From the NCBI RefSeq assembly GCF_963853765.1, contig NC_088854.1, positions 31,496,001 to 31,560,000 on the forward strand: a DNA stretch of 64,000 bases, in the 5' to 3' direction. The stretch is from Magallana gigas (taxonomy: Eukaryota). Below the pieces are notes generated by a model. That model searched no databases. It had not been told where the DNA came from and saw only the letters and a list, made by a program, of their open reading frames with translations. A program made the translations under genes and the position numbers. This document shows positions 21,164 through 24,100 of this stretch, one piece after another; the first letter of the stretch is position 1, and every line of letters starts with the position of its first letter.

Positions 21164-24100
21164 ATGGCAGGTCGTCTGCCAGCAGTTGTCATTGACAATG
21201 GAACTGGGTATGCTATCAGATTTATTTGCTTTCCACTCAATAACAAACAACAAATGCACACCTCAACAGTAAGGTACCAGGGTGGGCGGATTTTTTTACT
21301 TTTATCTGCTCACAAATTTTCGCACAATACGTTTAAAATAGACACATCTTAAATTCTTCCTGTTAAATAGATCGAGGCTCTGTCTAATGAACACGTGATC
21401 ATGATGTATAATCCAACAGGAAACTTGGCTCGATGTTTCACATCCGCATACTTCCTGCTCTTAGACTTAGTGTATAGTTTTGGGAGGTCCCTGGGCTGTT
21501 TGATAGGGGACAGTTTTTGGGAGTGAAATTCATTTCTGTGATCATGTCGTTGTCGGCAGGGTTCAAGGGTTCCCCCACAGGGACACCCGCTGTAATCATT
21601 GACTGTGGGACAGGGTATGTAAGCAGGGCGTGTACTATTTTTATTGCTTTGTGCATATGTTTCCTGATGCTAGGATTACGATGAACAGCCATTTTAAACT
21701 CTTTATTTTTGAAAGAAAAGTTATACATATGTGTCATTGTCAGTACTTTTGTGATTTATTCAGTTTTTTTGGTTTTTATTATGCTTCAGTTTGACTTATT
21801 TTGATATTCAGTGAATTTGTGCAAATTTGTGCCGGTACATTGATCATAAAAGTAGGAAGCAAATTTCTGAAAGATAGATAACACACATGCACATATGCAT
21901 GAAGTTTGTACAATGTTATCACAATGTTTGCGGTATCTAAGTGGGTTTTATTTATGTGTGTGGTTTCTGAAACTATAGTTTACATACTTGATTGTTCAGG
22001 GATTGTTTTCCTCTTCACCACAACCCAAACCAAATATCTTAATAAATTTCATTTCCTTCAATTTTCATTTACAATTCCTGCAGGTATACTAAAATGGGAT
22101 ATGCTGGTAACACTGAACCACAGTTCATCATTCCATCAGCCATTGCTGTGAAAGAAAGTGCTTCAATCGGCAGCCGACAGGCCAAAGGAGTGGAAGATTT
22201 AGACTTTTATATTGGGGATGAAGCTGTCAATGCAACAGGCTATTCTGTTAAGGTAAGGGTGGTATTTGGAAATTTTACGAAGTCAAATACTGACTGAAGT
22301 GGCTATTTTTGTCTGCGAATTTGTAAATAACACTATCAAGATTCAGAGATAGATGTATGTTAAAATCAATTTAAAAAACTTTTCCTGATTCTATATTTAT
22401 TTGAGATTCTCTTCCCAGCTTGTATTCACATCTTTTTATTTAAATATGATGAGAAAATGTAGTGTATGTTCATTTGAAAACTGAATTTTCATGATAAATT
22501 CATAAATTTTCTAAATGAAGACAAGTACTTCAGGTTCATGCTATGCCCATAAAAAAGTTAATGGAAACCAAACAAGGGAATTTTGTAAATGACACAATAT
22601 AAAATATACAAAAATCAACAACTTTCACATCCTTTGGAATCCTTAAGTTTTTTATGCTTTATATATTTATTAAATATGTTGGAGAGCTATCAAAAGAATG
22701 CATTTAGTATGACATTTTTCAGGTGTCTGTTATCAGATGTATATGCAGAAACTTTACATTAATTTACACTGTTTAATTGAGAAACCAGTTTTTAAATCAC
22801 AGATTCTTCACTTATTACTGAATTGCTTAAGTTATGATATTTTTTATACTGTAATACATTGATTTTAAAGGTTATGTTCAAAATTTAATTTATACATAGA
22901 TCAGTATTTGAGAATTGGAGAGAAAGTTGCCCATAAGTTAGTTAATATATGTAAGGTATGACTGTTACTTATTGTAAATTTTATTCTTTCAGTGGCCTAT
23001 AAGACATGGTATTGTTGAGGACTGGGATTTAATGGAGCGATTCCTAGAACAGGCCATATTTAAATATCTGCGATCAGAACCTGAAGATCATTACTTCTTA
23101 TTGGTAAGTGAGAGATATTAGGGAAACAAGTGAACTTAAAGTGAGCTCACTACTCCATCTTCTTGATGATAAGAGAAATGATATAAGTAAAAATGAAAAT
23201 TGTAATCTGAAAACATCTTAAGGGAGAAAGTTCATTCTAAAGTACTTAGCATAAAGGCTGGTAGCCATTAGTTGTGAACAGGGAAATGGATATGAAATTT
23301 ATGTCTTAAGATTCAGGAAGTTTGAATTGTGTCCATATCTTGAATGATTGAATAATAATAAAAAAAAAACAAGTCTTATATATTGTTGGGGTGGTTTTTG
23401 TTTTTTGCAGAAACAAATGAAATGTCAATCTTAACATTTTAAATCATTGCCTCCCAGCTATTTCAAAGAAAATGCATATTCCGAATATTGGTGATTTGGT
23501 CAGGATATACAAAAAATAGCGACCTGCAAAAATAACCTGCTCTAGGGTACATCTTAAAATGGGTTCTTTTTCCTAAACGAAATGTATGTGAAAGTTTATG
23601 GGTTTTTTTTTCTCTTTTTCATAATTGTAAAGCAAGGTGCTAAGTGCTTGTTGGTGGCATAATTTGCATCCATATCCAATCCATGTTCATAGGAATTTTT
23701 GCCTTGCATGAATTTCACTTGAAATTCACATATAAATGAATTTCATGTGAAGTGCATATGAAAAAAAGTAGTGAAATTTAGCACAGAAGGATATCAGGTG
23801 AAAAAATTTACAAAGTATCTTGTGAAATGTATATTACATGATATTCATGTAGATGTATTTTTCACATGAAATACCTGTGAGGCATAGTCAGCCAAGATAA
23901 TATTATGCAAAATCAGTGAACCAATTCTTTTTCCATTTACTGACAGGTCAGATTACATTTGCCTTCATAAAATCTATCAGACAATAATGCATAAATAAAA
24001 TGTGAACACAGTCGCTACTCATAGCTATACTATCAAGCTGAAGAATACATGTAACCTTATAACCTTATATGCAAGTATTAACTTATGTAAGTTAACAAGT

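What the first reader, a model, noticed from the sequence alone, without database searches (positions are those of the whole stretch)
21164..21614. Arp3 has two tandem paralogous first coding exons that swap the N-terminus and P1 nucleotide-binding loop
Seen: exon 1a (21164-21207) encodes [15 protein letters not shown]. Inside intron 1, a second ATG-led exon (21544-21614) encodes [24 protein letters not shown]. It ends at the same codon position with an equivalent GG|GTATG donor and splices in frame to exon 2, giving 423 aa vs 414 aa. The shared part PAV(V/I)IDxGTG differs mostly at synonymous sites, which suggests purifying selection. ETS-like ACTTCC motifs precede both exons (~21102, ~21440). 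Known: DxGTG is the phosphate-binding P1 loop, human ARP3 has DCGTG, and vertebrates diversify Arp2/3 through paralogues (ARP3/ARP3B). Inference: one gene may produce two Arp2/3 isocomplexes through alternative promoters, one with a Ser/Thr-rich N-terminal extension and Cys for Asn next to the ATP site. I do not recall this being described.
Basis: partly seen in the sequence, partly recalled or inferred. Interest (0 to 1): 0.75.

Follow-up and report, generated by a model that had tools for sequence, protein, structure and literature searches.

The report
Bivalve Arp3 has two first exons
The oyster's only Arp3 gene really has two alternative first coding exons, both transcribed and spliced in frame, giving two Arp3 proteins with different N-termini; the arrangement is kept in every bivalve lineage examined, is predicted in databases, and was not found described in any searchable paper.

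Summary
Exon 1a (21164-21207) and exon 1b (21544-21614) both join exon 2 (22084) in frame, giving 414 and 423 aa. RNA reads and contigs from four runs in three studies show both junctions. Exon 1b accounts for roughly 10-56% of exon-1-to-exon-2 joints.

The same 1a, 1b, exon 2 layout is present in mussels, a scallop, an ark clam (where 1b is unannotated), a unionid and a venerid. It was not found in two snails or an annelid. In Mytilus, exon 1b shows 9 synonymous and 0 non-synonymous changes among three species. An ETS core motif lies upstream of 14 of 15 first exons.

A separate promoter for 1b is supported by the read-depth profile, by a Mytilus mRNA contig and by the conserved motif. It is not proven, because no 5'-end data were available.

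The Cys-for-Asn swap beside the ATP site is oyster-specific. The conserved differences are the leader peptide and VIID versus VV(I/V)D.

The genome has one Arp3 gene, so this is its only source of Arp3 diversity. RefSeq and UniProt already list the isoforms as automatic predictions, and no searchable paper describes them. What the second N-terminus does is unknown.

The parts
21079..21207 (+). Exon 1a: 5'UTR from about 21079, ATG at 21164, donor after 21207. Canonical metazoan leader MAGRLP followed by AVVIDNGTG.
   Evidence: RNA contigs in X10 and X13 start at 21079 and 21078 with Illumina adapter letters directly in front. The 21207/22084 junction is seen in 3 and 17 raw reads and in contigs of two runs.
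21101..21106 (+). ETS-core motif ACTTCC (GGAAGT on the other strand), 63 nt before the 1a ATG and about 22 nt after the 1a transcript start.
   Evidence: The same motif in the same orientation lies 57-63 nt before the 1a ATG in mussel, scallop and ark clam.
21450..21455 (+). ETS-core motif ACTTCC, 94 nt before the 1b ATG, inside the 1a-1b interval. Candidate core element of a second promoter.
   Evidence: A motif lies within 250 nt before the 1b ATG in 5 of 6 independent bivalve species (binomial 9.6e-5).
21484..21614 (+). Exon 1b: ATG at 21544, donor after 21614. The 5' end is approximate, somewhere in about 21430-21500. Leader [15 protein letters not shown] followed by AVIIDCGTG.
   Evidence: The 21614/22084 junction is seen in 3 and 8 raw reads and in contigs of two runs. 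PolyA read depth rises from about 1 to 5-9 at 21484. There is no ATG between 21471 and 21543.
22084..22252 (+). Exon 2, the common acceptor for both first exons.
   Evidence: Its translation hits solved Arp3 chains at E about 8e-19.
22993..27790 (+). Common exons 3-10: 22993-23103, 24130-24333, 25176-25319, 25906-26079, 26260-26352, 26655-26780, 27037-27120, and 27695-27790 with the TAG stop.
   Evidence: Splice sites read. The assembled frames are open and 83.5% identical to a fish Arp3 over the full length.

Best explanation
This is the single Arp3 gene of an oyster (Magallana gigas or a very close relative). It has two homologous first coding exons that arose by an ancient tandem duplication of exon 1. 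Each exon carries a 5'UTR, a start codon and the first beta strand plus the P1 loop up to GTG. Each ends in the same codon phase and is spliced to the same acceptor of exon 2.

Exon 1a is transcribed from about 21079. Exon 1b most likely starts from its own ETS-type promoter in the 380-nt interval between the two start codons. The two mRNAs therefore use one first exon or the other. They encode Arp3 proteins that are identical from Tyr16 (1a form) or Tyr25 (1b form) onward.

Shown here: both splice junctions, their variable ratio between libraries, conservation of the exon pair across Bivalvia, and purifying selection on the 1b peptide.

Inferred: the separate start site, translation of both mRNAs, and that the 1b leader gives Arp3 or the Arp2/3 complex a different regulation or partner. 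In Pteriomorphia the leader is Ser/Gly-rich and has a Thr-Pro just before AVIID. The separate promoter would also allow independent transcriptional control.
For: Splicing and expression:
- Stranded polyA raw reads give 3 and 17 reads for 21207/22084 and 3 and 8 reads for 21614/22084.
- Contigs of two further RNA runs carry both joints (k-mer depth 349.6 and 332.1 for 1a; 447.1 and 35.3 for 1b).
- No 1a-to-1b joint was listed.
- Depth between the exons is about 0-1.6, equal to the background in the intron downstream of 1b, and rises at 21484.

Transcript start:
- No upstream ATG lies in 21471-21543.
- A 3.8-kb M. coruscus transcript contig encodes the whole 425-aa 1b form. Its 99-nt 5'UTR is collinear with the genome just upstream of exon 1b and carries no 1a sequence.

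Conservation:
- The order 1a, 1b, exon 2 is the same in Mytilus (two species), Argopecten, Tegillarca, Sinanodonta and Mercenaria.
- The Tegillarca exon was predicted from this model and found unannotated.
- It was not found in Littorina, Candidula or Capitella.

Selection:
- Nine variable sites in Mytilus exon 1b are all third-position and synonymous. None of 200,000 random trials reproduced this.
- The leader is alignable among four pteriomorph orders.
- The oyster SNP 21579 A>G is synonymous.

Promoter motif: an ETS core lies upstream of 14 of 15 first exons (binomial 6.6e-13).

Copy number: there is one Arp3 gene in the genome.

Databases: UniProt A0A8W8L1K4 of M. gigas carries the identical 1b N-terminus.
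Against: - No 5'-end data (CAGE, RACE or full-length reads) were available, and raw-read counts are small (3-17 per joint).
- In X10 and X13 a contig runs unbroken from inside exon 1a (21182) through the interval to the 1b donor. In X13 the intron after 1b has no coverage. So some transcripts from the 1a start probably read through and use the 1b donor.
- No protein evidence exists for either N-terminus.
- Between bivalve orders the leader differs strongly (pteriomorph, unionid and heterodont types). The peptide's role may therefore be lineage-specific or small.
- Contig depths are a poor measure of expression.
Confidence: 0.85

Rival explanations
1. Exon 1b matters only as the carrier of a second promoter. 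Any alternative first exon of this gene must re-encode the strand and P1 loop, because the intron splits the codon after GTG. On this view the leader is tolerated rather than functional, and the two proteins behave alike.
For: - The leader differs greatly between bivalve orders, and the residue after Asp is variable: C, N, V, T or H.
- The 1b share varies about five-fold between libraries, as expected for separate transcriptional control.
- ETS motifs are conserved at both exons.
Against: - The Mytilus leader shows only synonymous change: 7 of the 9 variable sites lie in the leader codons and none alters the peptide.
- Oyster and ark-clam leaders still share 9 of 15 residues despite very old divergence.
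- The Val-to-Ile difference (VIID against VV(I/V)D) is fixed in every bivalve examined.
Confidence: 0.3
2. There is no second promoter. The 21614 donor is an alternative 5' splice site of a long exon 1 transcribed from about 21079. In such mRNAs the 1a ATG opens a 62-codon frame that stops at about 21350, so the form would be regulatory or unproductive rather than coding.
For: Contigs in X10 and X13 run from 21182 across the 1a donor to 21613. In X13 they continue into exon 2, while the downstream intron is uncovered.
Against: - In polyA raw reads the 1a-1b interval is at intron background and depth steps up at about 21484.
- The Mytilus full-length 1b contig starts 99 nt before the 1b ATG and carries no 1a sequence.
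- An unproductive exon would not keep an open, start-codon-led frame under purifying selection across the whole class.
- ETS motifs are conserved in the interval.
Confidence: 0.1
3. Exon 1b is a dead duplicate used only by splicing noise.
For: None beyond the prior expectation for intronic look-alike exons.
Against: - It contributes about 10-56% of exon-1-to-exon-2 joints in four runs.
- It is intact in six bivalve species spanning the main lineages.
- It shows only synonymous change in Mytilus.
Confidence: 0.02

Closest known systems
Mammalian Arp3 / Arp3B (ACTR3 / ACTR3B) and the ARPC1A/B and ARPC5/5L iso-complexes
   Same: There is more than one version of an Arp2/3 subunit in one organism. 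In mammals this gives complexes with different properties, for example Arp3B branches being disassembled faster through MICAL2 oxidation of Met293 (PMC8193582; PMC11316031).
   Different: In mammals the versions are separate paralogous genes that differ along the whole protein. Here one gene makes two versions that differ only in the first 15 or 24 residues, through alternative first exons. No functional difference has been shown.
Alternative first exons that arose by tandem exon duplication, for example tropomyosin exons 1a/1b giving long and short isoforms (from general knowledge, not tested here)
   Same: Homologous exons lie in tandem, each likely linked to its own start site. They are used one or the other, join the same downstream exon in the same phase, and are conserved over long times.
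   Different: This has not been described for Arp3 or any Arp2/3 subunit in the searchable literature. The duplicated part includes a nucleotide-binding loop.
Automatic isoform predictions: RefSeq 'actin-related protein 3 isoform X1/X2' of Mytilus, Argopecten, Mercenaria, Mya, Dreissena and Ruditapes, and UniProt A0A8W8L1K4 of Magallana gigas
   Same: These are the same two N-termini. The M. gigas entry has the identical 1b leader.
   Different: They are unreviewed models with no comparison across species. The M. gigas model also lacks the 42 residues of exon 8, and Tegillarca and Pinctada models miss or mis-predict the exon.
Cytoplasmic actin isoforms that differ mainly at the N-terminus (from general knowledge)
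   Same: Members of the actin fold whose isoform identity sits in a few N-terminal residues on the surface of subdomain 1.
   Different: Actin isoforms come from separate genes, and whether the Arp3 leader is exposed in the complex was not tested here.

Membership tests
Arp3 (actin-related protein 3) | Actin-fold protein whose closest solved and named relatives are Arp3, not actin or Arp2 | tested here: met
   Exon 2 hits Arp3 chains 1k8k_A, 7jpn_A and 9dlx_A at about 8e-19. The full length is 83.5% identical to a fish Arp3 and 90-92% identical to bivalve Arp3. It matches UniProt Arp3 of M. gigas apart from one mismatch and the 42 residues of exon 8 that the model lacks.
Arp3 (actin-related protein 3) | Single orthologue in the genome (no Arp3B-like paralogue) | tested here: met
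   Exon 4 finds one 100% match. The next matches are 62% identical or less and have actin-like open frames.
Alternative first exons from tandem exon duplication | The two exons are homologous and end in the same codon phase | tested here: met
   Shared PAV(V/I)ID-x-GTG, both ending GG|GT. The same holds in six other bivalve loci.
Alternative first exons from tandem exon duplication | Each joins the same downstream acceptor, and they are not joined to each other | tested here: met
   Joints 21207/22084 and 21614/22084 were seen in all four runs. No 1a-to-1b joint was listed, although depth was low.
Alternative first exons from tandem exon duplication | Each exon has its own transcription start | tested here: inconclusive
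   For: the depth step at about 21484, the Mytilus mRNA contig starting 99 nt before the 1b ATG, and the conserved ETS core. Against: contigs bridging the 1a donor into 1b. No 5'-end data were available.
Arp2/3 iso-complexes | Both subunit versions are made as protein and enter the seven-subunit complex | not testable with these tools
   Only RNA and sequence conservation are available.
Arp2/3 iso-complexes | Complexes with the two versions differ in activity, stability or regulation | not testable with these tools
   The only indirect sign is purifying selection on the 1b leader.

The most novel reading that the evidence does not exclude
Bivalves have kept two Arp3 N-termini since before their main lineages split. 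They are made from one gene by promoter-linked first exons. On this reading the 1b leader gives a second class of Arp2/3 complex with its own regulation or partner in particular cells. One possible route is phosphorylation of the Thr-Pro that sits just before the first strand. This would be iso-complex diversity without gene duplication, resting on a part of Arp3 (its otherwise near-invariant MAGRLP N-terminus) to which no searchable paper assigns a role.
Probability: 0.3. Interest if true: 0.6.

Novelty: new variant of a known kind. Interest (0 to 1): 0.45.

Why it matters
How cells tune Arp2/3 through subunit isoforms is an active question, studied so far with vertebrate paralogues. Here a whole animal class reaches Arp3 diversity by another route. 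Only the N-terminal leader, one strand residue and, in some species, the residue beside the phosphate-binding loop differ, and the rest of the protein is identical.

That makes a clean natural experiment on what the Arp3 N-terminus does. The canonical leader is nearly invariant from sponges to humans, and no searchable paper discusses its function.

It also matters for annotation. Several bivalve gene models miss or mis-predict the exon. Expression studies in oysters and mussels that count 'Arp3' as one transcript are merging two differently regulated forms.

Tried and rejected
- Bacterial-type promoter and terminator scan: irrelevant to an animal gene.
- DNA alignment of the 1a and 1b regions: only 24 nt align, with a score no better than the best shuffle. 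There is no sign of a recent duplication and no shared flanks.
- The 0.74 share of words held by RNA-type runs first looked like a defined exon boundary. It is better explained by the 21579 A>G allele plus the donor edge, so I do not use it as start-site evidence.
- Aligning exon translations to a fish backbone to obtain an oyster-like query: MAFFT scattered the pieces, so I abandoned it.
- AlphaFold2 model of the Mytilus 1b form from a 39-sequence alignment: mean pLDDT 45 and pTM 0.33. It is unusable, no fold search was run, and nothing is claimed from it.
- Cephalopod loci: the Acanthosepion file was too large and the Octopus protein was not on record. Cephalopods remain unchecked.
- The minus-strand ORF 20579-21259 overlapping exon 1a has no Pfam match and is treated as chance.
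- No complex prediction was run, because no specific partner is claimed.

Full report
**What is in the sequence**

The window carries a ten-exon Arp3 gene on the + strand. Exon 1a runs from the ATG at 21164 to 21207. A second ATG-led exon, 1b, runs from 21544 to 21614.

Both exons end GG|GTATG in the same codon phase. Both fit the acceptor of exon 2 at 22084. With the nine common exons they give open frames of 414 and 423 aa.

Exon 2 hits solved Arp3 chains at about 8e-19. The whole protein is 83.5% identical to a fish Arp3. Every coordinate and peptide in the finding is correct, and the ACTTCC motifs lie at 21101 and 21450.

At DNA level the two exons align only over their last 24 nt, and the score is no better than the best of 200 shuffles. 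This is therefore not a recent duplicate. Exon 1b is unique in the 564-Mb genome, and the genome has only one Arp3 gene.

**Is exon 1b used?**

Twenty public runs hold exon 1b words. I laid four RNA runs from three studies on 21000-22300.

| Run | Type | 21207/22084 (1a) | 21614/22084 (1b) |
|---|---|---|---|
| X21 | stranded polyA raw reads | 3 reads | 3 reads |
| X22 | stranded polyA raw reads | 17 reads | 8 reads |
| X10 | contig k-mer depth | 349.6 | 447.1 |
| X13 | contig k-mer depth | 332.1 | 35.3 |

- All joints are GT..AG.
- Almost all first mates lie on the minus strand, as expected for + strand RNA in the usual stranded libraries.
- Exon 1b supplies roughly a tenth to a half of the exon-1-to-exon-2 joints, and the share differs between libraries.
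- No joint from 1a to 1b was listed.

**Where do 1b transcripts start?**

For 1a, contigs of two runs begin at 21078 and 21079 with adapter letters directly in front. This places the start about 85 nt before the ATG.

For 1b, the evidence for a separate start is as follows:
- In the polyA reads, depth in the 1a-1b interval is 0-1.6. That is the same as the background in the intron downstream of 1b. It rises to 5.2, 7.3 and 8.9 from 21484 onward.
- There is no ATG between 21471 and 21543, so the 1b ATG would be the first in such a transcript.
- In Mytilus coruscus, a 3.8-kb transcript contig from a public run encodes the complete 425-aa 1b form. Its 99-nt leader is collinear with the genome just upstream of exon 1b and contains no 1a sequence.

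Against a clean picture, contigs in X10 and X13 run unbroken from inside exon 1a across its donor to the 1b donor. In X13 the intron after 1b is uncovered. Some transcripts from the 1a start therefore probably skip the first donor and use the second. In those, the 1a ATG opens a frame that stops near 21350.

I read this as a minor by-product. Only 5'-end data can settle the proportion.

**Conservation**

Protein searches and N-terminal sorting show a second Arp3 N-terminus in many bivalves. All 1b forms carry AVIID where the canonical form has AVV(I/V)D.

| Group | Species | 1b leader type |
|---|---|---|
| Pteriomorphia | Magallana gigas (UniProt entry; identical to the window's 1b form apart from one mismatch and the missing exon 8), three Mytilus species, Argopecten | MS..F...(T/S)GTP, as in the window |
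| Unionida | Sinanodonta, Potamilus | MQRLAGHTP |
| Heterodonta | Mercenaria, Dreissena, Ruditapes, Mya | MPFMKH or MPAHMKH |

Unnamed 1b-type proteins from run assemblies are nearest to mussels or to venerid and myid clams.

The genomic loci show the same order 1a, 1b, exon 2.

| Species | Distance from 1a ATG to 1b ATG (nt) |
|---|---|
| Oyster (window) | 380 |
| Tegillarca granosa | 403 |
| Mytilus californianus | 421 |
| Mytilus galloprovincialis | 423 |
| Argopecten irradians | 458 |
| Mercenaria mercenaria | 934 |
| Sinanodonta woodiana | 1689 |

As a test of the model I fetched the ark clam Tegillarca granosa, where only the canonical form is annotated. Its intron 1 holds an intact, unannotated 1b exon with a pteriomorph-type leader and a GT donor in the right phase.

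A relaxed pattern scan of intron 1 and 5-6 kb upstream found no such exon in the snails Littorina and Candidula or in the annelid Capitella; part of the Capitella upstream flank is N. Cephalopods could not be checked.

The simplest reading is a duplication of exon 1 in the bivalve stem lineage, or at least before Pteriomorphia, Unionida and Heterodonta split. From general knowledge that split is roughly half a billion years old. Protobranchs were not sampled.

**Selection**

Among three Mytilus species, exon 1b has nine variable sites. All are third positions, all are synonymous, and seven lie in the leader codons. None of 200,000 random trials with nine changes was all-synonymous.

Between M. 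californianus and M. galloprovincialis, the first 400 nt of intron after 1b are 69% identical. The exon and the 150 nt before it are 92-95% identical.

Oyster and ark-clam leaders share 9 of 15 residues. The one oyster polymorphism seen in the exon, 21579 A>G, is synonymous. The peptide, leader included, is therefore under constraint, at least within Pteriomorphia.

**What differs between the two proteins**

That holds in the oyster, but it is not the conserved difference.

| Species or group | Residue in 1a | Residue in 1b |
|---|---|---|
| Oyster (window) | Asn | Cys |
| Mytilus | Cys | Cys |
| Heterodonts | Asn | Asn |
| Scallop (Argopecten) | Asn | Asn |
| Ark clam (Tegillarca) | Asn | Val |
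| Unionids | Asn | His or Asn |

The constant differences are Val to Ile in the first strand and the leader. The canonical MAGRLP is nearly invariant from sponge to human. The 1b leader is longer, is rich in Ser and Gly in pteriomorphs, and has Thr-Pro directly before the strand in pteriomorphs and unionids.

What the leader does is unknown. An AlphaFold model was too poor to use, and no searchable paper discusses the Arp3 N-terminus. A regulatory phosphosite or a partner-binding tail is inference only.

**Promoters**

An ETS core (ACTTCC or GGAAGT) lies within 250 nt before the start codon in 14 of 15 independent first exons. The background rate predicts about 11% per window, giving a binomial tail of 6.6e-13. 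For 1b alone it is 5 of 6, with a tail of 9.6e-5.

In the four pteriomorph orders the motif sits 57-63 nt before the 1a ATG in one orientation. An antisense-oriented motif also sits 73-119 nt before the 1b ATG. Binding was not tested.

**Comparison with what is known, and novelty**

The mechanism is the familiar one of promoter-linked alternative first exons born by tandem exon duplication. The biological theme is that of Arp2/3 iso-complexes, which in mammals come from paralogous genes (PMC8193582, PMC11316031).

New here is that an Arp2/3 subunit is diversified this way, in a whole class of animals, from a single gene. The two forms are already automatic predictions in RefSeq and UniProt. 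Eight literature searches found no description of them. I rate it a new variant of a known kind, of moderate interest.

**Limits and compliance**

- Read counts are small, and contig depths are rough.
- There are no 5'-end, protein or tissue data.
- Outgroup sampling is thin.

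Noticed in passing
window 13684-18398 (+): Two long ORFs upstream of Arp3. The second (15084-18395, 1104 aa) has endonuclease/exonuclease/phosphatase and reverse-transcriptase domains, so this is a LINE-type retrotransposon. 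The first ORF (282 aa) has only sub-threshold Pfam hits.
   Followed up: partly
window 30028-31577: A tandem array of a 165-nt unit (also scored as 336 nt), about 9 copies, 89-90% matches. It translates to repeated short open frames. Its nature is unknown.
   Followed up: no
window 37851-38111 (+) and onward: An exon with an importin-beta N-terminal domain (PF03810, E 1.1e-6). An importin-beta-like gene follows Arp3 on the same strand.
   Followed up: partly
window 21182-21613 with 22083-22111 (run X13, record 10): One RNA contig runs from inside exon 1a through the 1a-1b interval to the 1b donor and on into exon 2, while the intron after 1b has no coverage in that run. This suggests a minor read-through transcript from the 1a start that uses the second donor.
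   Followed up: partly
window 26655-26780 (exon 8): The UniProt model of the M. gigas 1b form (A0A8W8L1K4, 381 aa) lacks exactly the 42 residues of exon 8, which include the conserved LSGGST loop. This is either a model artefact or a skipped-exon transcript that could not encode a working Arp3.
   Followed up: no
window 21579: The assembly has A. All RNA reads and contigs in four runs have G, a synonymous change in a Thr codon. The six runs holding 100% of the sampled words may be from the assembled individual or strain.
   Followed up: no
L012:5404-5474 (Tegillarca granosa) and protein P0353 (Pinctada imbricata): Tegillarca has an intact exon 1b that its annotation misses. The Pinctada Arp3 model has a 50-residue unrelated N-terminus in place of exon 1.
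   Followed up: partly
proteins P0252 and P0312 (unnamed, from run assemblies): These are non-bivalve Arp3 proteins (85-89% identical to lophotrochozoan and bivalve Arp3s) with a canonical-length leader MAGHMP but VIID in the strand. VIID alone is therefore not unique to the bivalve 1b exon.
   Followed up: no
window 32427-32483: A perfect (TC)28 microsatellite.
   Followed up: no
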